DNA of 64,000 bases from Octopus bimaculoides (taxonomy: Eukaryota). A program made the position numbers and the translations under genes. The stretch is taken from positions 42,628,150 to 42,692,149 of the forward strand of contig NC_068983.1 of assembly GCF_001194135.2 (NCBI RefSeq), given 5' to 3'. This document shows positions 36,406 through 64,000 of this stretch, one piece after another (within the stretch, counting starts at the first letter, position 1; each line of letters begins with the position of its first letter). The notes below the pieces were generated by a model. It searched no databases and had not been told where the DNA came from. It saw nothing but the letters and a program-made list of their open reading frames with translations.

Positions 36406-36424
36406 TGTACTCATATGCACACAT

Positions 36425-37390: not shown

Positions 37391-37509
37391 TTTGTGGGGT
37401 CCACACAAGCAAAACAGTACAATGGGGGCTCACAGTAGTATTTTAGGGGCTAATGAAAACAATTTTGCTTTAGATGTGTATCTCCTGTAAGAAACAACCA
37501 CGTTTCATA

Positions 37510-41345: not shown

Positions 41346-41434
41346 TGTTTTGGAGGAATGGAACTCTGTGACTGGTTCTGACAACTCTCACACAACACAG
41401 CATAGCTGACTCAGAGAGAGGTGGGGAGACAGGC

Positions 41435-41481
<47 letters not shown>

Positions 41482-41774
41482 GAGGAATGGGGAAGCACAG
41501 ACAAAGACGAAGGTGAGAAAGACAGAGTGGCAGAGAGGTGGGTAGGGACAGTGAGAGAGAGAGAATAAGAAAGCAGAATCGATCCCCAATATTTGACTGG
41601 TTCTTTACCGACCCCTGAAGGGTGGAAAGTGAAGCTGTCCTTGACAGAACTTGAACTCAGAATGTAAACAACCAAAACAATTGCAACAAGGCATTTATCT
41701 GGCACTCCTAGTCCTATCAACAGTCTGCCTTAATTATCAATTACAATTATCATTAAACATCAATAATTACAAAC

Positions 41775-42240
41775 AAATGTGGATGTGTGCAAGTGTATGT
41801 GCGCATGAGTATGCATGTATGTGTGAGTATGCATATATACATATGAGCATGTGCATACATATGCATATGAATATACATGTGAGTATACATGCGTGCATGA
41901 GATTTTGTGTATGTGTGCGCGAGTATAAATGTATGTGTGGGTAGGTATGTGCATGCGTGTGAGTATACCAATATATGTCTATGCCTATGAATATGCATGT
42001 GTGTGCCTGCATGTGTATGTGAATGCATGTGAGTCAGTGTCTGTCTGTGTGAGAGCACGTGTGTCTGCATGTAAATGCATGTGAGTTTGTGCTTGTAAGT
42101 GAGAGTGTGTGTATGTAGGAGTATGCATGTGTGTGAGACAATGTGTACATGTATGCATGTGAATGCTTGTGTTTTTGTGCCTGAATGTGTGAGAGCTTGA
42201 GTATGTATGTGTGTGTATGCATGTGGATGCACGTGCATGC
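41775..42240. repeat. Long degenerate alternating purine-pyrimidine tract (TG/CA/TA/CATG)
   Basis: Directly visible; source of the His/Thr/Met-rich ORFs. Confidence 0.9.
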
Positions 42241-42853
42241 AGCAAAATATGCACCCTCAGCCTGGCAAAGACTGATGCCAACAACTGTTTTAACAACAAC
42301 AAAAACATTTCATGGAAAAAAAAAAAAAAATAATAATAATAATCCTAATAAATCAAAGACAGACAATGCCAGCATTTCATAAAACTAACTCCAAGGAGAG
42401 TAAACACACGCATACAATCACACACACACACACACACACACAGAGGCATTTGCACACACGTGCATGCACATGCACACAAACGTGTGTGCACAGAAGGAAA
42501 GAAGAGCAAGCGCTACAGTTACTATGGCATTTCTGAAGATGGTAAAATATCACATTATCGTGTCTGGCAGTAGTCTGTTCGTCCTTGACCAATACACTGT
42601 TGTCTCGCGGAAGTCAAACTTGAAGAAAAATATTGACATAAACTTGCTATAATGAAGCTAGTTGGTCTATTGCTAATTGATGGTGGTGGTGGTGGTGGTG
42701 GTGATGGTTTGCTGATTGTTCCCTTCACTACTTACAATGTCAAATGTCTTAATCCGTCATTTAAATAATACAGATTCACTAAATACCATACAGGATTAGA
42801 AGAATAATAATAACAACAACAATAATCATCATTTTTATTATTATTATTGTATC

Positions 42854-43295
42854 TAAGGCAGTGAGAGCTGGGTGAAATGAAAGTGCACCAGACCAAATAC
42901 TTCGTAGCATTTCGTCTGTCACATTCTGAGTTCAAATTCCACTGGGTTGACTTTGTCTTTCTTCCTTTTGGGGGTTAATTAAACAAGAACCAGCTGAGTA
43001 CTAGGGGTTGATATAAGCAATTTTTCCCCTGCCCCGGAATTGCAGGCCTTGTACCAAAAATTGAAATCATTATCATGGTGAGCTGGCAGAATTGTTAGCA
43101 CGCTGGACAAAATGCTTCACAGCGTTTCATCCATTTATATGTTCTCAGTTCAAATTTTGCCGAGGTCGACTTTGTTTTTATCCTCTGGAGGTTGATAAAA
43201 TAAATTCTAGCTGATTACTGGGGTCAATGTAATCAACTAAACCTTTCTCCCAGAATCCCAGGCCTTGTGCCTATACCAGAAAGGGTTTTTATTAT
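42854..43295 (+). mobile_element. Two tandem family C SINEs (others at 15600-, 19125+, 23930-, 24640+, 43750+, 44300-, 50340-)
   Basis: ggtgagctggcagaattgttagcac head, gttcaaatt B-box, gtcgactttg..tcctt..ggggttgataaa core, (ATT)n-type tail. Confidence 0.8.
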
Positions 43296-44832
43296 ATCTT
43301 CTAGCAAATTTNNNNNNNNNNNNNNNNNNNNNNNNNNNNNNNNNNNNNNNNNNNNNNNNNNNNNNNNNNNNNNNNNNNNNNNNNNNNNNNNNNNNNNNNN
43401 NNNNNNNNNNNNNNNNNNNNNNNNNNNNNAGCAAATTTATTGAAAGGTGGGTGGATGTTGGAAAAATGGCCAGTGTGAATGTACCAATTCTGAGAATACA
43501 CCTCTAGAAAGAACAAAAAGGGCTCTTGCCCTGCTGATCAGGCACCTGTACCGTTTGTGGGTTTTTCCACAAGTAGCCTTAAAACACCTCCCTCTATTGA
43601 GAGATTTTTTTTTCTTCTTATTTTGTTTACATGTTCTAAAACCCTTTATATCGTCCTGTTTTGTCATTTCATGTTGCTTTCATATTAGCCCTTGTGGCCA
43701 ATAAAAGAATTAATTATTATTATTATTATTATTATTACTATTATAATCTAAGGCAGCAAGCATGCAGAATCGCTAGCATCTGGTCCATCTTTGTGTCCCG
43801 AGTTCTGCCAATGTTGACTTTGCCCTTCGTTCTTTCAGGGTTGATCAAATAAGTTCCAGTTTAAACCTTGGGGTGAATGTAATTGGCTAGCCCGTCCCCC
43901 AAAATTTCAGGTCTTGTGCATTTAATAGAAATACTATATTAGATACACACAATTTCAGCATATTCACTAAAAAAGTTTTTAGTGCATCGAACCATTTGAT
44001 ATTGGCCCTGACTTTACATATGGGACCTAGGGTGATCTTCAAAATGTATTTGCTTTATGACACCACATAAAAAAAACCTGTGCTGGCGCTATGTAAAATG
44101 GCCAACAAGTTCGGTGGTTGAGGAAAGTCAATTACAGAGACCACAGTGCTCAACTGGTTCTTATTTTATTAATTGCGAAAGGATGAAAGGCAAAGTCGAC
44201 CTCAGCAGGAACAGTCCTCCAGCTTTCCAACTCTGGTCAAACCGTCCAACTCATGCCAGCATAGAAAACAAACATTCAATGAATGATAGTGATAATAATA
44301 GTAATGATAATAATGATTTCAAATTTTGGCACAAAGCCAGCAATTTTGAGAGAGGGGTAAGTCGATTACATCGAACCCCAGTACTGAACTGGTACTTATT
44401 TTATGATGAAAGACTAAGTCAGCCACGACAGAATTTGAACTCAAAACATGGAAACGGAAAAAATGCTGCCAAGCATTTCGCCTGGGATGCTAACAATCTT
44501 GCCAGCTCTCCACCTTAAAGAAAAAATAAAAATAAAAAATGAAAAGTAATAAAAATGATAATAAATCATACATGACACATGCAGAAATAAATGACATGTA
44601 ACTTGCTCTGTAGAGATGAAAATCCTACACGGAACATGCATCTTAAAAGAATAATGATAAAGAAATAAAGTAAAATGAAGAAAAAGAAAGAAAATAACAG
44701 AACGATATTCAGGAAAAAATTTTTTTTTTTTTTTGAAAACAAGTTTTTACAAGGAATTTGGTTTTTCAAACACTAGTCTCAGATGGAACAAAAAAGCATC
44801 TACCACGGAGATTTGGGTTGCACCTAACTTAC

Positions 44833-44880
44833 CTTATGCAGTTTATGCAGAGTGTTTAACTCCGGCAGATCAAAATGCAC
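44833..44880 (-). CDS. AHCYL1: 48-nt coding exon of the same gene: VHFDLPELNTLHKLHK
   Basis: Long pyrimidine tract ending gtttggcaatcctag|GTG and donor AAG|gtaagt; phase 0-0, open, splices in frame to the 22500 exon. VHF sits where IRBIT has its K-Q-I-Q-F PP1-docking motif. Confidence 0.8.
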
Positions 44881-45510
44881 CTAGGATTGCCAAACACAGA
44901 AAGAGAACAAAAAAGACAGCGGATTATGAACAAAAAAAAGGAACCAAATGTTTTTTTTTTTAAATCAAGGGAAGTTCTGGAATGTACCTAAAACAGTTAA
45001 CTTCTAAAAATAAAAATAAAAACCCAATGCTTCCAATGAATCAAGCTGTATTTTAGCTGGATATTTATATTTTATAATTTAAAAAATTAAACAAAGAAAA
45101 AATTTGGAAGATCTCTAATTTAGATAATGCTAAAATACTCAATGTAAATTAATTCAAATTCTATGCATTAAAAAAATCCATCTCAAACTGTATTTAGGCT
45201 AAAGCACTAAGGAAGGTCTTTCTATATATCTATCTAACTATCTATAAACGTTTATATAAATTCAAAAGGTGGGCTGGAAAGCACATGGTACTGAATGATT
45301 GGTTCCACATTATTCACATGCTTGACGTGGTTTGACCACAACCTTCCTAACTCGATAGGGTAGTGTGTGTGTAGTTGGTGTACTATAATGAAAAGAAACC
45401 TAGAAATAATGCTGACGAAGGATGTCAGCTGCATCTGTTGTATAACAGGGCCTCTAGGCTTATGTCATTTACAGTGGCTGGCTTTCTGAAACGTGTGCAC
45501 ATAATGTAAA

Positions 45511-45980
<470 letters not shown>

Positions 45981-46238
45981 TATATATATCATCATCGTCG
46001 TTTAACGTCCGCTTTCCATGCTAGCATGGATTGGACGATTTGACTGAATGACTGGTGAAACCAGATGGCTACACCAGGCTCCAATCTGATTTGGCAGAGT
46101 TTCTACAGCTGGATGCCCTTCCTAACGCCAACCACTCCGAGAGTGTAGTAGGTGCTTTTATGAGCCACCGGCACGAAGGCCAGTCAGATATATATATATA
46201 TATATATACTTTCTTTTAAGAAACTTTTAAATCCTTAT

Positions 46239-46957
46239 TTAACCCTTTAGCACAGTTGTCTCCTACCTTTTTTATACCATGGACCAGTTTCATGCTGGGC
46301 AATCTTTCCATGGACAGGTGGCAGCACATATGTGTAATTGAAGTGCATTTCAATAAAGAGGACAATGATAAAAAGAGCAATTTATTAAAAGGAAGAATTT
46401 GTGTATAATCTTTTGACTCTCATGTCTGGGCTCCAGCCTGGCCATACACCAGCATGCTTAGTTTCCCTGAATCAATGCCTATTACACTACTATCACTTCA
46501 ATATCAACTCACCATCATGTAGAATCAGTGGGAGCCCTTAGTTTGCTTCCATGCAACTGGGCATTCCCATCTGGGAGTAACGGGAGACAATGACACTCAA
46601 AATAGGTTCTTTATGTCTAGTTTATTTCGTAATTTTGTTTTGGTTATTGCCAGTGCAGAAAACCCTGCTTATTTATGTGGCCCAGGAACAAATGATCCAT
46701 GGACCAGTACTGATCCGCAGCCCAGTGGTTGGGGACCTCTGCTTTAGCGCTCAAATTACTCTGACAAATGTAAAGGTTATTTACGCATATTATTTTGAAT
46801 TAATCATGTTTTAAGTCATAGATTTGATATTTTGATGGTGCTATATTTAGAATGACATTGTAGAGTAGGTGAGAGAGACTAGATCTGGCCAGTGTGAACA
46901 TAAAACAGCAGGTATATTTGGGTCGGATATGGCCCAGATGAAATGCTGAGTGGTTAA
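46239..46957 (+). mobile_element. piggyBac-like MITE (TTAA-CCCT...GGTTAA) carrying a nested hAT MITE; other copies at 2412+ and about 57660-
   Basis: Ends ttaaccctttagc...gctgagtggttaa; body ttactctgacaaatgtaa...gaattaatcatg...tttagaatgacattg shared with 2412-2625. Confidence 0.7.
46253..46741. mobile_element. hAT (Charlie-like) MITE
   Basis: Imperfect TIRs cagttgtctcctacc / ggttggggacctctg, flanked by 8-bp direct repeats ctttagca / ctttagcg. Confidence 0.75.
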
Positions 46958-47421
46958 ACTGTTAGCTTAAATTCTTATGATAAAAATCATGAAGAGGAAA
47001 TACAGTTCTAAATGCCTCAAGAAGTTCTATGGCTCACAACATCATTTTATGTTCAGCAATAAAACAATGAGCAAATGCGTGAGAAATGTCATCCTTAAAA
47101 ATCTAGTGCCTATTCCTAACTACAAGGTGGAATCAGAGTCATTTCTAAACACAAGAGAAAAATTAGTACACAGAATCACCATTGTCATTATCTTCTTTTA
47201 ATGCCCATCTTTCATACTGGAAGACGATAGTTTGAGAGGATCCAACAGGTTGGAGGACTACATCATGCACAAACGTGTGCTTTGGTATAGTTCCTGCGGT
47301 TTAATGTATTTCCTAACACAAACCACTTTGCACAATACTGGGTGGTTTTATTTATAGTCCACCACTAGTTACATCACCATGTCACTGGCAACCTGCAATC
47401 CCCTTCAAATGAGACTAGAGA

Positions 47422-47461
<40 letters not shown>

Positions 47462-49514
47462 NNNNNNNNNNNNNNNNNNNNNNNNNNNNNNNNNNNNNNN
47501 NNNNNNNNNNNNNNNNNNNNNNNNNNNNNNNNNNNNNNNNNNNNNNNNNNNNNNNNNNNNNNNNNNNNNNNNNNNNNNNNGGTCCACCTGACTGGCTCCT
47601 GTGCTGGTGGCATGTAAAAAGCACCTATTGATTGTGGCCAATTGGCACATAAAAAGGACCATCCGAACTTGATCGATACCAAGCCTGCCCGACTGGCTCC
47701 TGTGCCGGTGGCACATAAAATGCACCCACTACATTCTCAGAGTGGTTGGCATCAGGAAGGGCATCAAGCTGTACAAACTTCGCCAGATCAGATTGGAACC
47801 TGGTGCAGCTGCTGGCTCTCCAGACCTCAGTCAAACCGTCCAACCCATGCCAGCATGGAAAACAGACGTTAAATGATGATAATGAGAGTATGAGGAAAGG
47901 CGTTAGAACAGATGATTTGCTGAAGAGGGAATACATGGTCACTGGCACCATATAAGAATGGGTGGGAGTAATTGCGGTGGAGCTGGAAAGAGAAATAAAG
48001 GTGGTAGTGGTGAAGTGGTGTTGGGTGGACCTTCTAAGTACAATAAAGGGGATACATAGTGTAATGACAGAAAAGAGGGTGGGTAGATATAGGAAGAGAG
48101 AAGGGTGGTTAGCAATGAGATGAGAGGAGAAAAAAGAGTGACTCATTGTAACAAAATGACTTGCATATATGTTGCCCTACACATGTATGAGCAATAATTT
48201 CTAAATGTTTAAATAATGAAACATCAGATGCATGCACGCATTTGCTCCTGTGAGAGCGTTACTTTTTTCTTTCTCAAATACATATATTCTTTCATTCTTT
48301 TACTTGTTTCAGTCATTTGACTGCAGCCCTGCTGGAGCACCGCCTCCATCACCATTTGACCTCCTCTTTTATATACTTGCACGGTTCAGAGACAATCGGT
48401 TGATGCAGAATGTCTACAGCTGTATGTCCTTTCTGTCACCAACCCCAACTTTCTTTCAACCAAGATAATATAATATATGTAAGTCTGTGTTGTATATGCT
48501 GTAGAAAACTTTAAAAAAAAGCTTATAGATATATAATTTTATATATATATATATATATATTGTGGTTTCAAACAACCACAACACTGAAATGAATGTACAA
48601 AACACATGATGTAAATTTGTCCTTACTGTAATTTCTCCTACATTTATTCAGTATACCATAATCAGTAATACTACTAATTTTAGTAGGAGTATAACCATTA
48701 CAATGGAAGGAGATGATGGTAATCTACATGGAGCTCTAAACTTAACACTAACAGTCATACATCTAACTATAAACACAAAATACATACATATATACGTATA
48801 TATATATGACCAACCAAACTATCAGATGTTACGCATCACTGATCACAATGCGCTTTGCATCATTTTAGCCTTCTAATGATGCCACCAACCAGGCTGGGCA
48901 AGCAAGCCTACATCTCCTCCTGATCGAAAAGGGGACTGGAGTAGCATGAAAAAGTGTTTCTCTCAAAAACACATGCCATCCGGTCTGCGAACTGAACCCA
49001 CGATCCAGCGATCACAAGCTCAACAGCCTGACCACTAGGCTATGCACCTTCACACACACAGATAGATATGCCATAGCATACATGCACAAGAAGTGTTAAA
49101 AATACGACTAGTACTCAATTTGGGAGAATTTTCCCATGAAGCTGTTGAAGTGTACAGATTTTAATTCTCTCAGCTGAAGTTGTAGAAAAATTGGACAAAA
49201 CTGTCGCAATCTCATACATTCCTCGTACATTATTGGAATTCTAAATGATTTTTAACAGTACAATAGAAAAATATGTGACAGAAAACATGATGGAGAGTTC
49301 CTGTCAGAGTATGAGAGTGGATGTGATTTAATCTCATCAGCTGGCTGCATCTATGCTTGACACTTATTTAATCAGTAAGTCATTTTGGAATGAAAATGTA
49401 TAACAACAGAGAACAATAACAAAATGGCAAATGAAACATGCTTTTCTGGTTGGTTAATACAGATCTCATATTGGTGTCATGTGATTTCAACAGTAAGTTC
49501 AGAAACTTCATGTA

Positions 49515-49701
49515 CAGTAATCCCTCGCCATGTCACAGCTTAATATTTAAGCTTGTGTTGATTCCTCCGTGGTGTAGGTTTGTATTTATGATGAAATATA
49601 TACAAATTATAAAAACAAACAGTACTGTTTCTACTTCGCAGATTTTCATCTATTGCAGGGGGTTTTGGAATGTAACACCCACAATAGTCAAGGGATAACT
49701 G
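49515..49701. mobile_element. Tc1/mariner (Tigger-like) MITE
   Basis: TA|cagtaatccctcg ... caagggataactg|TA. Confidence 0.65.
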
Positions 49702-51989
49702 TATACATGAAACGAGGTAAAACACTTTCAGGATAGTCAAGGAGCAAGCAGGAGGTTTTAATCATATAGACCAGTGGTTGTCAATAAGAATTCCATATGG
49801 CACTCGGGGGTTTCATATAAGATTTTGTTAAAAACCATGTGCAATAAATTGGTTTTACTCCGACAATACACAAAATATTAATTTTTTTTTTATACAATTC
49901 CTAATAATATTGAAGTATACAAACAGGATTTTTTAAACATCAAATGGCTACAAGGGTTTACCCTAGTAAAATAAAAATTTGGGGGAGGGGTCCATCATCA
50001 TCATCATTTAACATCCGTTTTCCATACTTGATGGGTTGGGCAATTTGACTGGAGCTGGCCAGCCAGCCAATTGCTTGTTTTGGCATGGTTTCTATGGCTG
50101 GATGCCCTTCTTAATGCCAACCACTCAGAGAGTGTAGTGGGTGCTTTTTACGTTCCACTGACATCGGCCATATTCAGATGGTGCTTCTTATGTGCTACCG
50201 GCACAAGAGCAAGTTGGGACAGGTGGGAGGCTGGCATTAACCATGTTCGCATGGTACTTTTAATGCGCCACTGGCACAGGGAGCCAGTCAGGCAGAACTA
50301 GCAATGACCCACACATGCATGGTGCTTAATAAATAATAATTCTTACTGCTATAGACACAAGGTCTAAAATTAATGAAGGGAGGGTAAATCAACTATAGGC
50401 ACATGACCAATGATTTTATGGTGCCAGTCTATGACTGGTACCTTAACCCTAAAAGGATGTAAAGCAAAGACAAACCTGGCAGAATGTAAAGAGCCAGAAA
50501 TGTCAATAAGAATTATGTCCAATATGCTAACAATTCTGTCAGCTCAACACATCATTGTCATATGTCTGCTTTCCATGCCAATAGTTTGACATTTGACATG
50601 GCTAGCAGGAAGCTGTCCAAACACCAACTGTCTGTTTTGGTATGGTTTCTACACCTGGATGCCCTTCATAATGCCAACCACTTAACAGAGTGCACTGGGT
50701 GCTTTCAACATGCCACTGCCTTGATAAAATTATCAGCATCATCAATAACATCATTATATATCCGTCTTTCATGATAACATGGTCTGGATAAGTGATTTGT
50801 GTTCTAGATGGGACAGAGGAACACATTCCTAACTTTCATGTTTTGGTTTGATCTCAACAGCTGGATATTTTTTTAACACATGCACGCTCGTGCACACACA
50901 CACACACACACACACTGAATGGCTCTTGTGCCAGTAGTACATAAAAGATACCATCCCAACGTGGCCATGGCCAGTGCTACCTGACTGGCTCCTGTGCTGG
51001 TGGCATATAAAAAGCACCCACTACACTCTTGGAGAGGTTGGTGTTAGGAAGGGCATCCAGCTGTAAAAACCTTGCCAGATCAGATTGGAGCCTGGTGAGG
51101 CCTCCTAGCCTGCCACGTCCCCAGTCAAACCGTCCAACCCATGCCAGCAGGAAAAACGGAAGGATGATGATGGTGGTGTGTGTGTGTGTGTGTGTGTTTG
51201 TCCTCTTAATTTAACTGTTCAGCAGACGAGATCAATAGAATAAGGGCCAAACTTTAAAAAAAAAATTTTTTAAAGCACTAAAACCCCTTCAAGGTGGTGT
51301 CCCAGTATGACTGCAATCAAATGATGGCATGGTAAAAAAATAAGAAATACGTATTTAGAATAGTCGTAATATTGATTCTTCGTTCGGAACTAAAATAAAC
51401 CACTGCAACACTTCAGCTTACTTGTAGATAGCGTCATTAGAAAAATAAACAAACAAACAAATAAATAAACCTCAAACAAACTAATTGCTAGAAATTTAAT
51501 TAACATTTGGAACTTTTTTTACCAAAATTACAAGAATTTCTTATTCAAGGTGAGAATATTTTTACTGAAAACATGTTTAGACAATATGACAAAAGATATT
51601 TAAAGACAGGGCTGATTGCAATTAACCTTGTCATTCATCATTATTCTAATTAGCAGTCAATAATACTAAGAGTTTAAATAATCAGTTCATCACCTGTGTG
51701 TCATTGTGCTAATTATATCTTTAATTGTGGAAAATGAAGTGACAGAATCTAAATGAAAGTTAAAACCTGAAACCATTTCCAATACATTACGGTTTTATAT
51801 TACACACACACACAACTTCAGCATTTAACATCTAACTTCTATGCTGACATGGGTTGGATGGTTCGACAGGGCCTAGTGAGTCGGAGGAATGCACCAGGCG
51901 CCAACATTTATTGTGGTTTATAACACTCAACTGGTCTTATTTTATCGAACCTGAACGATTAATGGAAGATATAAATTGAAATTTATTTA

Positions 51990-52250
51990 AAACAGGAAGT
52001 TTGTATCAAAACTGAAGGTAGTCTTGGGCAAGTTGATATCAAAAAGGAGCACAAAAGTGAGGTAGGCCAGGAGGAGGAGGATATTGGGAGGGTTGGTTTG
52101 AAAAAGGAGGACACCCAAAACCAGACAAGATGGCAAGATGGTGTGAAGGCAGTTACTATGGCGTTGAGGTCGATCCAGCCACTTCCTGATGTGTCGGGCA
52201 ATATGATATGCTTCAGAAGACCTGTTGAGTCAAGTAAAACCAATATCGTA
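51990..52250 (-). mobile_element. Retroelement ORF fragment, possibly Penelope-like; related fragment at about 6960-7190 (+)
   Basis: Shared ttttgatatcaac(c/t)tgcc core and LLISTC/FLISTC translation in both copies. The family assignment is tentative. Confidence 0.35.
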
Positions 52251-53286
52251 CCTATGGCCAGTGTCCCCTGACTGGCTCCCGTGCCGGTGGCATGTAAAAG
52301 GCACCATCCAAACGTGGTCGATACCAGGTCCACCTGACTGGCTCCTGTGCTGGTGGCATGTAAAAAGCACCTATTGATTGTGGCCAATTGGCACATAAAA
52401 AGGACCATCCGAACTTGATCGATACCAAGCCTGCCCGACTGGCTCCTGTGTCGGTGGCACATAAAAAGCACCCACTACACTCTCGGAGTGGTTGGCATTA
52501 GGAAGGGCATCCAGCCATAGAAACACTGCCAGATCAGATTGGAGCCTGGTGCAGACATCTGGCTCTCCAAGCCTCAGTCAAACCAGCCAACTCATGCCAG
52601 CATGGAAAATGGATGTTAAATGATTATAAGGGTGAATAACTTTTTTTCAAAATAGGGGAAATATTGAATTTAACAACGAGCACTATTTAGTCAAATGATG
52701 AAATCTACCATATAACAAAAAGGGAATTTAGAGATAGCACATCGCAGATGAAAATTACACAAGAATTTTTTTTGAATAAAGCAAATATTTTAAATCTCAA
52801 CATTTTCCAATCAAATTGAATATTGAAAATCTGACGGATAAAAGACAAGAAATATATAAGAGTGACAAATTTAAGCAAGCACTTTTTCATGACCACCACA
52901 ACTGAAATGGATTAACCCTTGAAGATAAGAAGAACTGTAAGTAGAGAAGGCAGATCATTAACAAAGTCATGAAAAGGAATGAAAGGACTGTGAAGAACCT
53001 AACTGATTGACTGACCAAACAATTGGTTAAATGGCTAACTAGCTGACTAATAATGGTAATAAAAGAAGTGAAATAGGACCAGTGTGTGTGTGTGTGTGTT
53101 TATAGACATAATGATCCTCCCAAGATACAATAAAATTTATTTCAACACAATCTTGCAAATCAAATACAAAAATAGGATACTGTAAAGAAATATAGAGAAA
53201 TAATTAAACAATAATTAATCACTTATCTGAATACAGTGATGATAGACAAATTAGCAGTTGTATGTTCAGTGTTCAGTTTTTAGCAC

Positions 53287-53325
53287 ACTTACCTAAAAAA
53301 TAAAAAGAAAATAGAAATTAAAATC
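53287..53325 (-). promoter_or_regulatory. Candidate recursive splice site (zero-length exon)
   Basis: Minus strand reads ttttaatttctatttctttttattttttAG|GTAAGTg: pyrimidine tract and TAG followed directly by a perfect donor, in the sense of the host gene. Confidence 0.55.
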
Positions 53326-56300
53326 ATTTCAGTGATTTTTTTTTTTTTTTCCTATAACAAAATATTTTTACTTCATCATCATTTAACGTCCACTTTCCAT
53401 AGTGGCATGAGTCGGACAATTTGACTGAAAACTGGTAAGCCGGAGGACTGCACCAGGTTCTAATCTGATTTGGCAAGGTTTCCAACAGCTGGATGCCCTT
53501 CTTAACGCCATAATATATTTGTTTTTCAGCAAATATGAAAATATTTTTGGAACAATTACTTTGCCAGATTTTAATACAGTTAACCACAAAATTGTTGTGC
53601 AGTTACAAAAACCTGTTTATCAATCAAGCAGACTGAGGCAAGAAAGATTACATGCTACAGTTAGAGTGACAAGTGAACACCATCATTATCATTGCTTTAA
53701 CGCACATCATTTTTCCCCCCCATCCTTGCATGTGTCAGATGGAATTCAAAGAAGCAGATTTTTCTACAGCCAGATGCCTTATCTTTTTCCAAACAAGATG
53801 GTATTTTCCCCAGAGCCAGGCATGTTTTCACGTAAGATTGGAAATAACTGACAGTGCTTGTGTAATAGTGGCACACAGTGTGAATGTGAACACTGTCTGT
53901 GCTTAGTGATTTCCAATGGGTTGGTTTCTGATGGTGAGATTGACAAGGGAACATCTAACTTATTGCAGAACAAATATCCCAAGGCTCTTCATAAAACAAA
54001 CTTTTGGGTTCCTAGCCAATGTTAGTTCAGTGGTCAGTCCCTCTTTCTCTCACATACCCAACCCTTCTCTCTCATTACTCCCACTGCCACCATCAATACT
54101 ACTACTTTTAATAAAAACATCAACTCTCCCTAGATTTCTTTGTCACTCTCTCCCTCTTTTTCATTCTTTCTCTCTCTCTCTTCGCCACTGCCCTAACCAT
54201 CTCTATGCCTACTATTACTCTCACCCCAACATGAGCAATAGTAGGAGTATCAATGACTAGTGAGAGACGGGGGTCGAAGTGTGACACACTGACACAGAAA
54301 TTAGTTTTCGCATTTATTATATTAGATAAGTTACCAAAGTATTGCGAAACTTTTGGCTAAGCACAATATAAATCAAAATAAATCTATGTCACAACAGAAC
54401 ACTCAGAGCTGAACCTTGGTTCTTAAAACTTTGTGGTCTCTTTGAAAGCATTTGTTTCCTCCTTTTTCAATACATAACTGTTAAGATTCATTCTGAACTA
54501 TTCCCTACAGCATTTAGATGGAATTTTTCAATGAAAGAATTACGTTAAATCAACCAAAATTTAAAGAAAGATCTTGGTTTGTGATTAGTTTGTAAAATGT
54601 AGAAAGGTGAGCTGCACAAGCAACAGAATGCTATTTTCGGATTTCCTATCAAGTTATACTTAATTAAATTCAAAAATCGACTGCAATTATTTCATGCATA
54701 ATTCTCAACAGACTCTCAGGCAACTTTAAAAGGTTTCCACTCTCCATTTTGTACATGACAATTTTAATAAGGAAAAAAAAATGACTTTATTCATACACAC
54801 ACTCATATAGGCATATTATGCACAGTTCTTGTTGCCATAGTATTCTAGTGAGAGCCACCAGTTCGTTCTCAGCTAGTTTAGTTAGGTAGGTGCTTCAAAG
54901 AGATTTAGCTTTCAATAGCTCATTTCATCACAATATATAATGGTATCATGAAATGGAAACATTCAATACAGGAAGCATCTGCAGTCATTTAACCAGTAAA
55001 TAGATTGTAGCCAAACTCTCCAGCAAATGAGACATTACCTTCTTAAAGGGAAAAAAAGACACTTTCACTTATGTAGTTCTAGATACACTATGTCTAAAAA
55101 CACGAAAAAAACAAAAAGGCACAGAAAGATGACATGGTTACAGCTGGAGTGTCTTCAATCATAATTCCTCTGAATGAAGGTTAACATGGATGAAACAATG
55201 ACAACAACAACAACAACATTACAAACACTGAAATATCAAATCACACATCTTACAAAAGGAAAGAAACAAGAGAGTGAAAATGATGGATGATTTATTTGCT
55301 TCCAGCATTTGGAAGGAGAAATCTCACAGTGAAAACTAGAGACAGATTCATGTTGTATCTATAAAGAGGATATATTTCTCAACTAGAGAAGGCACATGGC
55401 TTAGTGGTTATGATAGTCACTTCACACTCAATAAGGTCAGGAGTTCAATTCCTGGTGCTGCGTTGCAAGACACGTTATTTCAGGTTGCTGTAGTTCCCGC
55501 AACTGGTAAAAATGAGAGTTGTACCTGTATTTCAAAAGGCCAGCCTTGTCATACTCCATGTCATGCTGAATCCCCTTGAGAACTATGTTAAGGGTACATA
55601 TAGGAGTGCTGTGTTGTAACTGAGAGGGTGCCCTTCCTAATGCCAACCTACATGAAGGGTATATTTCTCAACTATAAATTCAGTTTCCATTTACAAAATT
55701 CACTCACAAGACTTTGGTTGGCCCAAGGTTAAAGTAGAAGACACTTGCCCAATGTGCAATGAAGTGGGTGCTGAACCCAGAACCATGCAGTTGGGAAACA
55801 AACTTCTTACCACACAGCCACACCTGTGCCTCATTGTTTGAATTCTCATTGTTCTGAGTGCACCCCATGAATTACAATCTGTTTGGCAGACATCAGCAAA
55901 TAATTTGTTAGCCAATTCTTATAGAGAAGAGCTCACACTTTGTGTGATTCATTAATCCGACTGTAGGGTAAATTTAAATGAGACACTCAGCACAGTCGAA
56001 ACACCATATAGTCTCAAAAGCTCTTACAATGAGTTATTGTACATGTTATGAACACACATCATCTAAAGGGTGTTCTCCGATGATGAAAAACAACAGTAAT
56101 CAGATATTCACATTGAAATCTGCCAGAGTATATTAAGAATGAAAAGATATGTTATTCTTTTGTAAAGTCTTATATTGGAAGAAAATCAATAATGAGTGAT
56201 AATTGATGCTGTAATTATCGCTTGATTAGTACAAAAAGCAGGGGTGGGGAAGTCAGAAGGAACTTACATGCAACACATGGGAATAAAAAGAAAACAAAAG

Positions 56301-59300
56301 AAAGGAAGAAAGAAAGAATAAGAGCCAAATCAGTGAACAAAAAAAGGAAAAAAAAAAATATCAAATGGCAGAAATCTAATGGTATGAGCAAAAGAAGTTA
56401 AAAGATCTGACGAATCTTCATAAGAATGAATTACTGGATTCTGTCACGCAAGACTGAGAAATGGGTTGTATTGAAAGAAATAACATAGAAACCAGTTAAA
56501 TATAACAACACTGCTGCTGATGTTGTGTGGTTGTAGATGGCATGCAACACACACAAACACACTGACTCAATTTGGGGCATAGTAAAAATAGTTGTGATGC
56601 AATTAGATGCAACTAATGCAGTGATGCAAATATTGACTGATAATTTGGTTCCAATGATGTGAACAACCATCCTTGTTACAAAGAACTAAGCAAGAAGGGA
56701 GACGACAAGTAGGGTCCTTTCTCTTTTTTTTTGCTTTTTTTTTTTTNNNNNNNNNNNNTTTTTTTTTTGCTGCTTTTTTTTTTTTATTCTTGCTTCAGGC
56801 TATTCCAATCTATGTTAGTATGTCTATCAAATGGAATGAAATCGATACTGAAGCAAGTGGTTCAAAAATAAATACATCATGATAACAATGTAAACTGAAT
56901 GTCTTCAGAATATCTGTGCCCTACTTATTGGTTACTACTGTAAAGTAGCATTAAGCTCTTGAAAATTTGAAAGCAATAACCAGCACCATTAACCACTGCA
57001 TGGCAGAATTGCAATATGGTCTTCAACTAGGTCAGAGCAGGACAGAGTTGGAACAAGTGTTCTTCTGATCAAACTAAGCCATTCAACCAATTATCGATTT
57101 GTCTTAGACAAGGGGCAAGTATGGCTGTGTAGATAAGAACTTCATTTCCCAGTCATGTGACTACAGGTTCAGTCCCTTTAGCACTGCAAGTGAATTTGGT
57201 CAACAGCAGCAAAAAGGCCAACATGTGTATCAGTGTGCGCCTGTGATTATATATCTTTCCTCACACTCCATTGGTTATGACCAGGGCTGTGGAGTCAAAA
57301 CACAAGACTTCAACTCCAATTCTTCTACTATTGGTACCTCTGACTCCGACTCCTCTTTATGTAATTAAGTGATTGTGGTCTACATATCTCATAGGGCATA
57401 TGCATACGCTTGTACTTTGAGAAGGCCTATATGTTATATCTGGTTTATATTAAAGAAGATATTGCGAGTCGGAATCGGTATAGTTTTATAGACTCCGACT
57501 CCAGCTACCTTTCAACTGTTTCCAACTGATGAGTGAACTGGAGCAATATGAAATAAAGCAATATGAAATATTGCAAACAATGCTTTAATGATGTATTCCT
57601 CTAATCTATGCTTTCAAGGGAAAAACAGATGTTAGAGACAAATGAACATGTTCAACCCATTATTTAAATTGGACTAAATATTCAACTCTTTTATATTCAA
57701 ACTGGCCAACTCTGACTTCTCACAACAATTCTACAATGCTATTCACTCGAACAATTACATCATTAAAATCTCAAAATTAGAAGATAATGCATAATTAATT
57801 CAAAACAATGTAAATAAACAGACATTACATTTGATAGATAGAACGAAAAAAAAACGGTTTAATCAAAGCCAAGTAAAAGCTACACAGCAGTAACTGTTAA
57901 ATTATTGACGAGTCTACATTACTTTCATTTTCTCATGTAACATTACTCAAAACTTATGCTTGATATCCTTGAGAAAAGTTTCAATATCAAACACCTTGGT
58001 TATCTTTAGCAGAGATCCTTTTTGTAAAGTTCACCCCATTAATGGAAATGATAGAAACTCAAGTATCTAACTTAAAATATGTAAAAAGCACCATCTGAAC
58101 GTGGTCGATGCCTGGTCCGCCTGACTGGCCCCCATGCCGGTGGCACGTAAAAAGCACCATCCAAATGTGGCCAATGCCAGTGCCCCCTGACTGGCTCCAA
58201 TGTCAGTGGCACGTAAAAAGCACTATCTAAATGTGATTGATGCCAGGCCCGCATGGCTGACTCCTGTGCCAGTGGCATGTAGAGAGCACCCACTACACTC
58301 TCGGAGAGGTTGGTGCTAAGAAGGGCATCCAGCTGTAGAAACACTGCCGGATCAGATTGGATCTTGGTGCAGCTACTGGCTCTCCAGACCTTAGTCAAAC
58401 CGTCCAACTCATGCCAGCATAGAAAATGGACATTACACGATGATGATGATGATGGACCAGTTCCACATCATGGTCTCAATTTTATCAACAAACTGATATT
58501 GTGGATCAAATACTCAAACCACAAAACCATATGTCTTCTCGTATATAAAGTGTGTGTGTGTGTGTATGTATATTACATTTTTTTTATTTCAGTCATTTGA
58601 TTGTGGTCATGCTGGAGCACTGCTTTTAGCTGAACAAACCGACCCCGGGACTTATTCTTTGTAAGCCTGATACTTATTCTATCAGTCTCTTTCACCAAAC
58701 CACTAAGTTATGGGGACATGAAAACACTAACATTGGTTGTCAAGCGATGGTGGGAAGACAGTAAGGATCTTGCCCTTTCAAGAAAGTAAGGGGTTTGTAG
58801 AGCAACCTTCTCTCCTCATAACAGTATGCCAAAAAACAACATGGGACTCAGAGACAACTTCAGAGAAAAGTTAAATTCAGTATCGGTACTCCTTCAGGAG
58901 CTGCAAAAGAGACAATTCTACCACCTCCCTGTTTATCTGGAGACTTTAAGACCAGAGAAATGACTTTCCCAACATAATTTTGACCATATCCAAAAAGGAC
59001 TCTCTTAAAGCATATAACTGATTCGATGAGAAACTGCACATAGAGGTGCAGGCATGACTGCATGGTAAGAAGTTTGCTTCTCAACCACATGGCTCCTGGT
59101 TTAGTCCCACAGTGTGACACCTTGAGCAAGTCCCTTCCACTATAGCCTTGGGTTGACCAAAGCCTTTGGGGTGGACTTGGTAGACAGAAATTGAAAGAAG
59201 CCTTATATATATAAGGGTAGGCAAGGTCGGCACTGCCTACCTTGAATAAAATGGATCAATAGCAACATTTCCATGGAGAGCCAGTCAGGGGACACTGGCA

Positions 59301-61718
59301 ATGACCCATGCATGAAAGGTGCTTATTGCGTGCCACCAGCACAAATAATAATAATTAAGTACATGTGCAGTTTCCAGACATCAACCTCTTAAATAGTCCC
59401 ATCAACCCCCAGGGACTGATATCAACTACTTTGGAGACCCCTGTCCTAGAAGTTAATTTTCAGCAATTAATTGATAGCAATGATTTGTAACTTTTATGAA
59501 AACTTCATTAAAATTCTAGTGAAAGTGAGAGAGAGTGATTACTCTTATCTCTTGCATTAGTGTTATATCCATCAAGTAATATTGAGCAACCAACACAACA
59601 CCTGTGGAGGTGCATGGTTTAGTGGTTGGAGTGTGGGACTCAGGATTGCAAGATTTTGGTTTTGATTCCTTAACTGTGCATATATATTCACTATTTCTAC
59701 TGTACCCTTCAACAGTTAATCTCTAAGACATTTCATCCCCTTTTCAGCACTTGCATAGCTTTATCCATAGCCATGGAGGGAGAGGCGATAGAGTACTTTA
59801 AAAATATGGATATGACCCCTGTCCCTCAAGGTTTCTATGCACTTGCTATTACAAAAGCTGCCTATTCCTGCTCTACTCACCCAGGCTTGAGTTACAAGTA
59901 GTTACTTTTCGTAATGCTCATACCTATCAGTAAAACAAACTGTCTACAGTGTTATTCCTCAGCTCCATGGGTAAGAAACAGAATAAGGCTGGGTGGTAGA
60001 GGAAACCCTGCAAAATGACATTTATCACAAAACTAATTATGACTAAGCTATGATTGGTGAGACCACTTTATGTGTCACCTGTCGAACAAGTTGTTGTCTG
60101 CATTTACATTTGCTTAGTTTTATCAAGATTATCTCTGGTACTACAAGTATTGTTGTTAATTTTATATGTGGTGTGTGTGTGTATGTGTGTGAATGCGGAA
60201 CTATTTCAAATGAAAAGGCAGTGCTCAGTTCATGTTGCAAAACCATATGGTTGATTGAAGCTGAATAATTTTAACTACATACATACGTATACATGTAATA
60301 TAATCTTATATATATATACGTGTGAATGTGAACATACATTATATGTGCCTGATTGTACTATAAATATATATCATACCAGCATGGAAAACAGACGTTAAAT
60401 AATGATGGTAGCTTTTATTTTTGATTTGCTTCGGTTTTGGACTGTGGCCATGCTGGGGCGCTACATCGAAAAATTTTAGTTGAATGAATCAACCCCAGTG
60501 CATGATTTTTTTTTAAAGCATGCTACTTATTCTACCAGTCACTTTTGCCAAACTGCTAAGTTACAGGGACGTAAGTGCACCAACACTAGTTGTCAAGCAG
60601 TGGTGGAGGAGAAACAAAGACAAACACACACAATGGGCTTCATTTAGTTTCCCTCTACCAAATCCACAAGGCTATAGTAGGAGATGCTTGCCCAAGGTGT
60701 CACGCCGTCCTCTACCAAATCCACTCCCAAGGCCTTGGACAGCCTGTGGCTATAGTAGAAAATGCTTACCCAAGGTGGCATGCAGTGGGACTCAATCTGG
60801 AACAAGGTGGTTGGGAAGCAAAACAGAGAGCAAGCAAGTGAGAAAGACTTATGTGTTGCTGACTTGCAATTTACTACTGACAAATGTCGATACTGAACAG
60901 AGCAATTTCAAATATTTAGTTAGATACATTATTTTTCTGTTCATTATGAATTTACAAGAGAGAAAAAAAAAAAAAGCAATGTGGTTTAAAAACCTATTTA
61001 TTTTACTAGAATCTAAAAGTCTTATTGCTTGATATCCTTAATCTCTTTTCGCACATAGTTCTTCTTTGTTGGTAACCAGCCTATCAATAGGTCAGCCTAC
61101 CAACATAACTAGTTTATAATAACCTATTGAAGAGCTGTAGCCAAAGGCAGAAGGTGTTCTACTTTCTCACACCAGGAATAATTTTATCATAAACTGTCCC
61201 CTACCATCTGGCAACCTTGATATTTGATTAAAATGGTTTATTAAAGTAAATGTTCAGTTTACATAACAGATTAAGCAGATGCTTAGAATAAGGTAAATGT
61301 TTATTATTCATCTTTGATGTTGGTTTTGTCGACTTTTAAAGTAAAAAATCAAAACAGCAATGTGACTGTAGAGGTGGTGGTGGTGGTGGTGGTGACAACT
61401 TCAGATCAGAATCTCGACAGAGCAAAACCTACAAAGATGTTGCATACCCCATCGTCATCATCCCATCTTCTTCAATCATTTCAATGTCCACTTTTCCATA
61501 TTTGCATGGATCAGATGGAATTTGTTGAGGCAAATTTTCCATGGCCTTCCTGTCACTAACCCTCACCTACCTCCAAGCAAAGGAATATTTCCCCAAGTGC
61601 ACACAGGATTTTCATGGAAAACTGGAAACAAATGAAATTGCTCATATGTCCCCGTTTATTTTACAATCACATGATATCAGGATAAAGTCACAAACAAACA
61701 CACGTGTGTGTATATATA

Positions 61719-62108
61719 GGTGCAGGAGTGCTTGTGTGGTAAGTAGCTTGCTAACCAACCACATGGTTCCGGGTTCAGTCTCGCTGCATGGCACCTTGGG
61801 CTAGTGTCTTCTACTATAGCCTTGGGCCAACCAAAGCCCTGTGAGTGGATTTGGTAGACGGAAACTAAAAGAAGCCCATCATATATATATGTATGTATAT
61901 ATTTTTGTGTCTGTGTTTGTCTTCCCATCATTGCTTGACAACCAATGTTAATGTGTTTACGTCCCTGTAACTTAGCGGTTCAGCAAAAGAGACTGATAGA
62001 GTAAGTATTAGGCTTACAAAAGAATAAGTCCTGAGGTCGATTTGTTTGACTAAAGACAATGCTCCAGCATGGCCACAGTCAAATGACTGAAACAAATGAA
62101 AGAATAAA
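61719..62108 (+). mobile_element. Near full-length tRNA-derived SINE, family B (more than 20 copies or fragments, e.g. 744-, 5870-, 8540-, 10050+, 14545+, 21255+, 26100+, 30915+, 38320-, 40060-, 60420-)
   Basis: A-box-like tgcttgtgtggtaag, B-box-like ggttcagtc, conserved ccttgggc/agtgtcttctactatagcc block, internal (TA/TG)n linker, tail gctccagcatggccacagtcaaatgactgaaaca. Confidence 0.85.
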
Positions 62109-62365
62109 GGAATATATAGGTGCATGTTCATAGAAAGTTTTGTTGAGGACAGGACACGTCTCTAATGCTGGTGCCATAAAAAAAAAAACACAAAACACCC
62201 AGTGTTATCTGTGAAGTTGTTGGTGAGAAGATAGGTAAACGGTTGCAGAAATCAAGCATGAAACCAAAAATGAAATGTAAATGAAATGTAAATGAGATGT
62301 GGTCCCCTAACCCATCTAGGGCTAATTCTAGTCATGAAGACTTAGTCAGCCTACATGTTGTTGTT

Positions 62366-62723
62366 GGCATTCCGTCGCTTACGACGTCGAGAGTTCCAGC
62401 CTGCTTGTGAAATTAATGTGCAAGTGGCTGAGCACTCCACAGACACGTGTACCCTTAACGTAGTTCTCGGGGATATTCAGCTTGACACAGTGTGACAAGG
62501 CTGGCTCCTTTGAAATACAGGTACAACAGAAACAGGAAGAAAGAGTGAGAGAAAATTGTGGTGGAAGAGTACAGCAGGGTTCGCCACCATCCCCTGCTGG
62601 AGCCTTGTGGAGCTTTAGGTGTTTTCGCTCAATAAACACTCACAACACCCAGTTTGGGAATTGAAACCACGATCCTATGACCGCGAGTCCGCTACCCTAA
62701 CCACTGGGCCATTGCGTCTCCAC
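62366..62723 (-). mobile_element. tRNA-derived SINE, family D
   Basis: Head gtggagacgcaatggcccagtggttagggtagcggactcgcggtc with B-box-like ggtttcaattccc; homologous copies at 5491-5858 (-) and 23148-23458 (+). Confidence 0.85.
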
Positions 62724-64000
62724 AACCNNNNNNNNNNNNNNNNNNNNNNNNNNNNNNNNNNNNNNNNNNNNNNNNNNNNNNNNNNNNNNNNNNNNNNNNN
62801 NNNNNNNNNNNNNNNNNNNNNNNNNNNNNNNNNNNNNNNNNNNNNNNNNNNNNNNNNNNNNNNNNNNNNNNNNNNNNNNNNNNNNNNNNNNNNNNNNNNN
62901 NNNNNNNNNNNNNNNNNNNNNNNTTGTTTACATTCTCACAATTAAGCAGTTCAGCAAAAGAACCCAATAGAATAAGTACCAGACTTAAGTGAGCGATATT
63001 GATTTTATCAACTAAGCCCATCAGAGTGGTGCCCCAGGAGGGCCATGGTCCAATGATTGAAACAAGCAGAAGGTAGAAAATAAATTATCCCCCCTTTCAT
63101 CTGAAAGTTGCTAACATTTACCCTGAGATTTATATTTCCTTTCTCTGATTAAATGGCAGAGTTCAGCTAAGAGGTCTGTCTAACAAGCTACTTGGCAAAC
63201 CTGGAGAGGCTGGTGGCACATAAAAAGAACCCATTAGTTTCTGTAAAGTGATAGGCATTAGGAAAGGCATCCAGCTGAAGAAACCATGCCAAAACAGACA
63301 ATTGGAGCCTAAAAACAGCTCTCCAGTTTGCCAACTCCTGTCAAACGGCCCAACCCATGCCAACAAGGAAAACGGATGATGTTTGGCATGTGTCAATCAG
63401 CACACCACCACCTACTTGAATTGTCTAAACCTTACACCACCGTTGACTTATTTCAGCAATTTGTCTGGGCTGGTTTTCTTTATTCTAACAAAGTAAATCT
63501 AGTTCATTTCTTGTTCAAATCATTAAATATAAAATAACTAACCTTGTTATGTGTACAGGTAGGTGAATCTAGCTTTTAACAATATAAATATTTGCTCAGA
63601 CTACTAAAGCGATAAATAGAACGTTTTTTTTTTTCTTTCTTTCTTTCTTTCTTTTTCCTGCTTGCAAACAGGAGAGAACCATTGGATACAAACTGTATTG
63701 TGTCTTTAACTTTTCTTCACCTTTAACTTCCTCAGCAGACAATAGGTAAATATAAAATCCTAATTGGAAATGGCTAGAAAGGTGAATGTAAGAAGGAAAA
63801 AAATTCCACATGCTAGACAGTGACATGAAGGCTGTTGACAAAAGAATAGATTCTTTTATAGCCACACACATTGCTATTATGTTAAACTGTCGTATGTCCA
63901 AATTTGGCCACATGCTTTTTTCCAATATTTAATTTTACTTGCGATAGCAGGTTCTTTTGGTCAATCTATCGTATCTCCAGCTGTTTCAGATGAAAACTGT

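What the first reader, a model, noticed from the sequence alone, without database searches (positions are those of the whole stretch)
53287..53330. Textbook recursive-splice (ratchet) site in the upstream long intron
Seen: in the host-gene sense, an approximately 30-nt U-rich tract ending in UAG abuts a perfect GUAAGU donor. It was the clearest such junction I found by eye in 64 kb. Established: Drosophila removes long introns stepwise at AG|GT ratchet points. Inference: this large-intron gene is spliced recursively; I am not aware of this being described in cephalopods.
Basis: partly seen in the sequence, partly recalled or inferred. Interest (0 to 1): 0.72.

Follow-up and report, generated by a model that had tools for sequence, protein, structure and literature searches.

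The report
Candidate recursive splice site in octopus
A near-perfect back-to-back acceptor/donor splice motif lies in the sense strand of a very long intron of an octopus AHCYL/IRBIT gene; it could let the intron be removed in two steps as in flies, but sequence alone cannot show it is used, and about 1 window in 25 holds one this good by chance.

Summary
The motif is real. On the minus strand, a 26-nt U-rich tract (22 of 26 pyrimidines) ends in UAG at 53293 and abuts GUAAGU at 53292-53287. It is the best AG|GT junction on either strand: normalised score 0.90, against 0.73 for the next best.

I identified the host gene. Minus-strand exon 22416-22500 encodes the serine-rich N-terminal exon of an AHCYL/IRBIT-type "adenosylhomocysteinase 3". 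Exon 1 is not in the window, and the Octopus vulgaris gene model spans 199.5 kb. The site therefore lies in the sense strand of a first coding intron of at least 41.5 kb, 30.8 kb upstream of exon 2.

The site has the sequence hallmarks of fly ratchet points: TT at -5/-6, a branch-like UUAAU at -26, and a 59-nt zone free of AG.

Three things limit the claim:
- An equal or better site is expected by chance 0.03-0.06 times per 62-kb strand.
- There is no convincing downstream donor for the cryptic RS-exon that flies and vertebrates need.
- Neither conservation nor RNA evidence could be obtained with these tools.

Verdict: a plausible but unproven recursive site (about 0.4), nearly matched by a chance pseudo-site (about 0.38). 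If real, it is a new member of a known kind.

The parts
53287..53330 (-). Ratchet-point-like motif: U-rich tract, UAG (AG at 53294-53293), then GUAAGU (53292-53287)
   Evidence: best joint AG|GT site on either strand, normalised score 0.897.
53295..53320 (-). Polypyrimidine tract, 26 nt with 22 pyrimidines, TT at -5/-6; no AG in the 59 nt upstream of the junction AG
   Evidence: The TT at -5/-6 criterion comes from Duff et al. (10.1101/006163).
53317..53321 (-). Branch-point-like UUAAU, candidate branch A at 53318 (-26)
   Evidence: yUnAy scan. Consensus match only; no lariat data.
53287..53292 (-). GUAAGU donor that would be regenerated after exon 1 is joined at 53292; with the preceding AG it gives 8 contiguous U1-complementary bases
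   Evidence: donor 10.4 bits, among the 5 best of 3854 GT sites on this strand.
53221..53292 (-). Only candidate short cryptic RS-exon (70 nt, 53292-53223), ended by a very weak donor uaa|GUGAUU (GT at 53222-53221); stop codons in all frames
   Evidence: 2.7 bits. The next donor, uug|GUCAGU at +277, scores 5.1 bits.
53373..53510 (-). Octopus SINE 3' module in sense orientation with a (GAT)n tail, ending about 75 nt upstream of the site; carries an acceptor-like uuaccaguuuucag| (exon start 53424)
   Evidence: 16 similar copies in the window; acceptor 6.1 bits; the resulting 132-nt exon has stops in all frames.
53336..53350 (-). A15 run between the SINE and the U-rich tract; not part of the SINE
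   Evidence: the other 12 SINE copies examined lack it.
53136..53141 (-). AAUAAA 151 nt downstream of the junction
   Evidence: Common in AT-rich DNA; function not tested.
22416..22500 (-). Host-gene exon 2 (85 nt, EIKYNLTPQRPRIRSRSVSQSSTDSYSS) of an AHCYL/IRBIT-type adenosylhomocysteinase 3; acceptor uuuuauauuugcag|G, donor CAA|GUAAGU
   Evidence: 100% identity to O. vulgaris P0001; 94% to Biomphalaria and Aplysia and 81% to Solemya AHCYL proteins.
22501..64000 (-). Part of the first coding intron (at least 41.5 kb here); exon 1 (MSEPGMEIEPLG...DRANR) is not in the window
   Evidence: tblastn; O. vulgaris gene range 199,545 bp; exon 1 aligns to the Solemya AHCYL N-terminus.

Best explanation
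The site is a zero-length-exon 'ratchet point' in the first coding intron of the octopus AHCYL/IRBIT gene. Proposed mechanism, all steps inferred: as RNA polymerase transcribes the roughly 195-kb intron, the exon 1 donor pairs with the strong 3' splice site at 53293 (UUAAU branch at -26, 26-nt U-tract, UAG). This removes the upstream part of the intron. The ligation places exon 1 directly in front of GUAAGU and so regenerates a strong donor. That donor is later joined to the exon 2 acceptor at 22500, removing the last 30,792 nt and leaving no trace in the mRNA. The reverse order is also chemically possible: 53292 to exon 2 first, which regenerates a U-tract-UAG acceptor in front of exon 2. Shown: the motif, its strength, its strand, its location in a long intron, and the identity of the gene. 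Inferred: every splicing step.
For: The motif is the window's outlier and is as strong as the gene's authentic sites. It is in the sense strand of an intron of at least 41.5 kb, in a gene whose O. vulgaris model spans 199.5 kb. TT at -5/-6, found in 99.5% of fly ratchet points, is present. A branch-like UUAAU and a 59-nt AG-free zone are present. Chance expectation is only 0.03-0.06 per 62-kb strand. [quoted passage not shown] Recursive sites occur in most fly introns longer than 40 kb (PMC6110457). In human cells recursive splicing is more frequent in first introns (PMC13105047).
Against: There is no RNA evidence and no conservation evidence; both were out of reach. The RS-exon needed in flies and mammals (PMC8605326) has no convincing donor here: +70 uaa|GUGAUU scores 2.7 bits and +277 uug|GUCAGU scores 5.1 bits. 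Vertebrate-sized genomes show no sense-strand enrichment, and octopus genome architecture is vertebrate-like in size. The site was picked as the best of the window in a scan, so p of about 0.04 overstates its significance. The first-step segment would be about 164 kb, far above the fly maximum of 63.6 kb, so further sites outside the window would be needed. There is no broader sense-over-antisense excess of moderate sites in the window. The Biomphalaria orthologous intron (17.2 kb) has no strong site; this is weak evidence, because that intron is short.
Confidence: 0.4

Rival explanations
1. Chance pseudo-site. A U-rich low-complexity stretch in an AT-rich intron happens to abut one of the roughly 1-2 AGGTAAGT octamers expected per strand per window. 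It is not used, or is used only sporadically, and is not under selection.
For: Exact AGGTAAGT occurs at chance frequency: 3 in the window, against about 1.2 per strand from my base-composition arithmetic. About 0.5% of 20-mers have at least 18 pyrimidines. The expected number of sites this good is 0.03-0.06 per strand per window. That matches the 0.07-0.12 per 100 kb seen on complementary strands of many animals, and implies thousands per genome. The site was chosen post hoc as the best in the window. No supporting RS-exon donor is present. Vertebrate large introns carry such motifs with no enrichment, and recursive splicing is reported as rare in mouse brain (PMC8797253 abstract).
Against: It is still a 1-in-25 event for the sense strand of this window. 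It combines several independent fly ratchet-point hallmarks (TT at -5/-6, long AG-free zone, branch-like motif). All invertebrates tested so far show a strong sense-strand excess.
Confidence: 0.38
2. The GUAAGU is the donor of a cryptic or alternative cassette exon, not a zero-length exon. The most plausible version is a 132-nt exon (53424-53293) whose acceptor is supplied by the sense-oriented SINE. Its inclusion would introduce a stop codon, making it a poison exon.
For: The SINE-borne acceptor uuaccaguuuucag| scores 6.1 bits at a typical exon distance from a 10.4-bit donor. The corresponding part of another SINE copy in the window also reads ...cctcag|tcaaacc. Stops occur in all three frames.
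Against: No protein in the database contains such an exon. Searches with window ORFs near the site found nothing, and only one Octopus protein carrying exon 2 was found. This reading does not explain the strong U-tract-UAG directly abutting the donor. There is no transcript evidence either way.
Confidence: 0.12
3. Splicing-independent U1 snRNP binding site. The 8-nt U1-complementary AGGUAAGU suppresses premature cleavage and polyadenylation in the long intron, for example at the AAUAAA 151 nt downstream (telescripting), and the U-tract is incidental.
For: There is perfect complementarity over AG|GUAAGU and an AAUAAA at 53141-53136. That long introns depend on U1 to suppress intronic polyadenylation is from my own knowledge, not checked here.
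Against: AGGTAAGT occurs at chance frequency, and AAUAAA is common in AT-rich DNA. Nothing specific points to selection for this role. This reading is not exclusive of the others.
Confidence: 0.05

Closest known systems
Drosophila intronic ratchet points / zero-nucleotide exons (Ubx, kuz, osp, luna; Hatton 1998, Burnette 2005, Duff 2015, Pai 2018)
   Same: [quoted passage not shown]
   Different: U rather than the consensus C at -3. No evidence of conservation, junction reads or lariats. No convincing downstream RS-exon donor. The implied segments (about 164 kb and 31 kb) exceed the fly range of 2.6-63.6 kb. The lineage is a lophotrochozoan with a large, repeat-rich genome.
Vertebrate recursive splice sites with RS-exons (Sibley 2015; Zhang 2018; Joseph and Lai 2021 review of the mechanism)
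   Same: A long first intron and an AG|GU junction that would regenerate a strong donor.
   Different: Vertebrate and fly recursive splicing relies on exon definition through a downstream 5' splice site of a cryptic RS-exon. Here the nearest GU donors score 2.7 and 5.1 bits.
Computationally defined 'RP-sites' of large introns (Burnette 2005; Shepard 2009, PMC2773006)
   Same: This is exactly that kind of object, a motif-level prediction. My normalised score of 0.897 is above the 0.80-0.85 thresholds those studies use, although the matrix differs.
   Different: Those studies rest on genome-wide sense/antisense enrichment. Here there is one site in one window (1 versus 0).
SINE/Alu exonization and intronic pseudo-exons
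   Same: A sense-oriented SINE 75 nt upstream offers an acceptor 132 nt from the strong donor.
   Different: The U-tract-UAG that abuts the donor lies outside the SINE and is not needed for exonization.

Membership tests
Recursive splice site (ratchet point, zero-length exon) | Juxtaposed strong 3' splice site and 5' splice site around an invariant AG|GT | tested here: met
   acceptor 12.1 bits, donor 10.4 bits, normalised joint score 0.897; top site on both strands.
Recursive splice site (ratchet point, zero-length exon) | Prominent pyrimidine tract with TT at -5/-6 (99.5% of fly ratchet points) | tested here: met
   Sequence uuuuuuag|; the criterion is from 10.1101/006163.
Recursive splice site (ratchet point, zero-length exon) | Located in the sense strand of a long intron (more than about 11 kb in flies) | tested here: met
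   Exon 2 lies at 22416-22500 on the minus strand, exon 1 is absent from the window, and the O. vulgaris gene range is 199.5 kb. The full intron length in this species is inferred.
Recursive splice site (ratchet point, zero-length exon) | Cryptic RS-exon (about 50 nt) closed by a downstream donor that is weaker than the regenerated donor | tested here: inconclusive
   the only donors are uaa|GUGAUU at +70 (2.7 bits) and uug|GUCAGU at +277 (5.1 bits). They are weaker as required, but so weak that chance explains them.
Recursive splice site (ratchet point, zero-length exon) | Evolutionary conservation of the AG|GU core above its flanks | not testable with these tools
   No octopod orthologous DNA was obtainable. 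The Solemya gene range was also too long to return DNA.
Recursive splice site (ratchet point, zero-length exon) | Splicing intermediates: reads joining the upstream exon to the site, saw-tooth read density, recursive lariats | not testable with these tools
   No RNA-seq access.
Recursive splice site (ratchet point, zero-length exon) | Class-level sense-over-antisense enrichment in long introns of the genome | tested here: inconclusive
   In this window there is 1 sense versus 0 antisense site at a score of at least 0.75, and no excess at lower scores. The attempt to sample more octopus DNA gave only 20 kb.
Exonized SINE / poison cassette exon | TE-borne acceptor and a donor at exon-like spacing, with transcript evidence of inclusion | tested here: inconclusive
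   The geometry is present (6.1-bit acceptor, 132 nt, 10.4-bit donor). No transcript or protein evidence was found.

The most novel reading that the evidence does not exclude
Octopus removes the roughly 195-kb first intron of its AHCYL/IRBIT gene stepwise at fly-style zero-length-exon ratchet points. This would be the first recursive splicing shown in a mollusc or any lophotrochozoan. Together with insects, sea urchin and vertebrates, it would imply that recursive splicing of long introns is ancestral to Bilateria and was kept in a lineage that independently evolved a vertebrate-sized, repeat-rich genome.
Probability: 0.35. Interest if true: 0.5.

Novelty: new member of a known kind. Interest (0 to 1): 0.3.

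Why it matters
Cephalopod genes have very long introns; this gene's O. vulgaris model spans about 200 kb. How such introns are removed accurately is unstudied in the literature I could search. Recursive splicing is documented in flies and vertebrates and predicted from motif enrichment in other insects and sea urchin. A validated octopus site would extend it to Lophotrochozoa and provide a concrete locus for experiments. As it stands, the value of the finding is a precise, testable candidate: exon 1 joined to 53292, a saw-tooth step at 53293, and a branch near 53318. It is not a discovery.

Tried and rejected
**Finding the host gene**
- Long ORFs are almost all SINE or microsatellite translations.
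- Pfam on ten composition-ranked ORFs gave nothing.
- A splice-site-plus-ORF screen followed by a protein search found exon 2.
- Other exon candidates (61448-61566, 44833-44880, 5064-5318) had no homologues.

**Orthologous DNA for a conservation test (all failed)**
- The O. vulgaris gene range is 199.5 kb and Solemya's is 129.5 kb, so no DNA was returned.
- An exact look-up of the 110-aa ORF next to the site found nothing.
- Eight ORFs within about 700 bp of the site had no homologue among 5.8 billion proteins.
- A metagenome scan for the 26-mer across the junction gave 0 hits.

**Class-level enrichment test**
- I tried to fish octopus gene models with a SINE peptide. This returned one protein and 20 kb of unrelated O. 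vulgaris DNA, which has no power.

**Biomphalaria orthologous locus (L001)**
- Intron 1 is 17.2 kb and its best sense site is weak. This is uninformative for a 195-kb octopus intron.

**Is the motif part of a repeat?**
- It lies outside the SINE, which ends near 53373 with a (GAT)n tail.
- The A15 run is not a SINE tail.
- 52636-53359 has no other copy in the window, and 52631-53372 has none in L002.
- I considered that the U-tract is the decayed poly(A) tail of an antisense retroposon, linked to the coding-like ORF at 51975-52268. That ORF sits between inverted SINE pieces, and only a 12-mer (AATATTTTTACT at 53361 and 51555) repeats. This idea is unsupported but not excluded.

**Other**
- Rfam: no family match in the window.

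Full report
**1. Observation**

On the minus strand, the window reads gaaatgattttaatttctattttctttttattttttAG|GTAAGTgtgc across 53330-53283. The AG ends at 53293 and the GT occupies 53292-53291. The 28 nt ending in AG contain 20 T, 2 C, 5 A and 1 G.

AGGTAAGT occurs only three times in the 64 kb. Only this copy is preceded by a pyrimidine tract.

With a generic metazoan weight matrix:
- The acceptor half scores 12.1 bits and the donor half 10.4 bits. Each is among the best handful of roughly 3,500-3,850 AG or GT sites on its strand.
- The joint score of 22.6 bits is the best on either strand; the next are 19.6 and 18.1.
- On a normalised scale the site scores 0.897, and no other AG|GT on either strand reaches 0.75.

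**2. Chance**

| Null model | Expected sites at least this good, per 62-kb strand |
|---|---|
| Markov order 1 | 0.027 |
| Markov order 3 | 0.043 |
| Markov order 5 | 0.057 |
| Real acceptor and donor halves recombined, sense | 0.039 |
| Real acceptor and donor halves recombined, antisense | 0.041 |

- This is about 0.06 per 100 kb per strand. It agrees with the 0.07-0.12 RP-sites per 100 kb reported on complementary strands of large introns in thirteen animals (PMC2773006, Table 2).
- The site is therefore a 1-in-25 event for the sense strand of this window.
- By my arithmetic on that rate, a genome of a few gigabases would hold a few thousand such sites by chance.
- The site was chosen as the best in its window, so the nominal p-value overstates its significance.

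**3. Context: the host gene**

- The window is 36.8% G+C, has 11 assembly gaps, and is about 32% self-similar repeat. Most of that is an octopus SINE.
- Long ORFs are repeat translations.
- A screen for open segments flanked by good splice sites picked out minus-strand 22416-22500, with acceptor uuuuauauuugcag| at 12.4 bits and donor CAA|GUAAGU at 8.8 bits.
- Its peptide EIKYNLTPQRPRIRSRSVSQSSTDSYSS is 100% identical to an Octopus vulgaris protein (P0001). It is 81-94% identical to 'adenosylhomocysteinase 3' (AHCYL/IRBIT-type) proteins of Biomphalaria, Aplysia and Solemya; the Solemya protein carries the AdoHcyase domain.
- Exon 1 of P0001 aligns to the Solemya N-terminus, so it is a genuine AHCYL exon. 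It is not in the window.
- The O. vulgaris gene model spans 199,545 bp.
- The next conserved coding exon is also absent from the window.

From this:
- The host gene is on the minus strand.
- 22501-64000 is part of its first coding intron: at least 41.5 kb here, and about 195 kb by inference from O. vulgaris.
- The site lies in the sense orientation 30,792 nt upstream of the exon 2 acceptor.

**4. Anatomy of the site**

Features that favour a functional 3' splice site:
- TT at -5/-6. This is present in 196 of 197 fly ratchet points but only 44% of ordinary fly introns (10.1101/006163).
- A yUnAy match, UUAAU, with its A at -26 (53318).
- No AG in the 59 nt upstream of the junction AG.

The donor is perfect from -2 to +6.

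Features that count against, or are neutral:
- In flies and mammals, recursion proceeds through a short cryptic RS-exon (about 50 nt) closed by its own donor (PMC8605326).
- Here the only GU donors downstream are uaa|GUGAUU at +70 (2.7 bits, lacking G at both -1 and +5) and uug|GUCAGU at +277 (5.1 bits). This criterion is at best inconclusive.
- An AAUAAA lies 151 nt downstream.

**5. Neighbouring repeat**

- A SINE 3' module occupies 53373-53510 in the sense orientation and ends in a (GAT)n tail.
- The A15 run at 53336-53350 is not part of the SINE, since the twelve other copies examined lack it.
- The motif itself lies in sequence with no other copy in the window (52636-53359) or in 20 kb of O. 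vulgaris DNA (52631-53372).
- The SINE supplies an acceptor-like uuaccaguuuucag| at 53424 (6.1 bits). Paired with the GUAAGU donor, it would define a 132-nt exon with stop codons in every frame.

**6. What could not be tested**

Conservation:
- The O. vulgaris and Solemya loci exceed the DNA-return limit.
- ORFs flanking the site have no exact or homologous entries in the protein collections.
- A metagenome scan for the junction 26-mer found nothing.
- A SINE-peptide search meant to sample more octopus loci returned one protein and 20 kb of unrelated DNA.
- The Biomphalaria orthologous intron is only 17.2 kb and has no strong site. This says little about a 195-kb octopus intron.

RNA evidence is outside these tools.

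**7. Weighing the explanations**

For recursion:
- All five invertebrates examined by Shepard et al. (four insects and a sea urchin) show a 4- to 22-fold sense-strand excess of such sites in introns longer than 50 kb. Vertebrates show none.
- In flies, most introns longer than 40 kb contain recursive sites.
- If octopus behaves like other invertebrates, most sense-strand sites of this quality would be real. If it behaves like vertebrates, which it resembles in genome size, most would be noise.

Estimates:
- Recursive splicing at this site: about 0.4, after allowing for the weak RS-exon evidence and the post hoc selection.
- A chance, unused pseudo-site: about 0.38.
- Donor of a SINE-assisted cryptic or poison exon: about 0.12.
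- A splicing-independent U1 site: about 0.05, and not exclusive of the others.

**8. Comparison with the known, and novelty**

- The object is the same kind of thing as the computationally defined RP-sites of Burnette 2005 and Shepard 2009. At motif level it matches fly ratchet points.
- It fails no defining feature. The two features that actually define membership, splicing intermediates and conservation, are untested, and the RS-exon feature is inconclusive.
- Searches of the held literature found no report of recursive splicing in cephalopods or molluscs.
- If validated, it would be a new member of a known kind in a new lineage. It would not be a new mechanism.

**9. Verdict**

- Interest is moderate to low (0.3) until RNA-seq or a genome-wide sense/antisense test is done. 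Both are straightforward with public octopus data.

Noticed in passing
window 22416-22500 (-): The AHCYL/IRBIT serine-rich exon (…RSRSVSQSSTDSYSS) is conserved almost residue for residue between octopus, gastropods and a bivalve. Only one Octopus protein (from O. vulgaris) carrying it turned up in the protein search, so other octopus annotations may miss this exon.
   Followed up: partly
window 18313-18351 and 18209-18292 (-): The last 37 residues of the O. vulgaris gene model P0001 map here at 77-89% identity, about 4 kb downstream of exon 2. They do not resemble AHCYL proteins of other molluscs. This is probably a mis-annotated or alternative terminal exon pair. The differences also show the window is not from the O. 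vulgaris assembly itself.
   Followed up: partly
window, e.g. 1036-1173, 9073-9209, 17030-17166, 28611-28743, 35133-35267, 40789-40924, 45978-46130, 47747-47880, 52493-52630, 53373-53510, 58311-58446: A SINE family has at least 16 copies of a roughly 140-bp 3' module in both orientations, ending ...catgccagcatggaaa.ggacgttaaa(tgatga)n. Some copies carry internal 66-bp tandem units (37669-37977, 58081-58290, about 52260-52450). The same family is dense in 20 kb of O. vulgaris DNA (L002).
   Followed up: partly
window 21698-21941: An 18-bp minisatellite (ATGACCTTTGCAGAGCAC, 13.6 copies, 95% matches) lies about 475 bp downstream of exon 2 in intron 2. It generates long repeat ORFs on both strands.
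   Followed up: no
window 41058-41286 and 41700-42500: There is a 42/84-bp tandem array and a long degenerate (CA/TG)-rich tract. Together they produce the longest, spurious ORFs in the window.
   Followed up: no
window 51975-52268 (+): This is the most protein-like ORF by composition (…EDTQNQTRWQDGVKAV…). It lies 1 kb from the site on the opposite strand, between inverted SINE fragments. It has no Pfam match, and its origin (transposon remnant?) is unresolved.
   Followed up: partly
window 61567 and 14281 (-): Two AG|GTGAG junctions sit in a shared repeat fragment of about 70 nt (aatatt.ctttgcttgga..agGTGAG…aggaagg). At least one repeat family therefore carries its own AG|GT, which illustrates how repeats can seed ratchet-like motifs.
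   Followed up: partly
window 44834 (-) and 27748 (+): These are the other two exact AGGTAAGT octamers. Neither has a pyrimidine tract (11 and 13 of 20 Y). The 44834 one closes a 48-nt open segment with a 6.3-bit acceptor, which had no homologue in the protein search.
   Followed up: partly
L001 (Biomphalaria glabrata) 10001-10120, about 27356-27440, 34252-34530: The snail AHCYL 'isoform X2' model uses a different first exon 17.2 kb upstream of the conserved EIKYNL exon, followed by a non-conserved terminal exon. The pattern of truncated or alternative models is similar to that in O. vulgaris.
   Followed up: no
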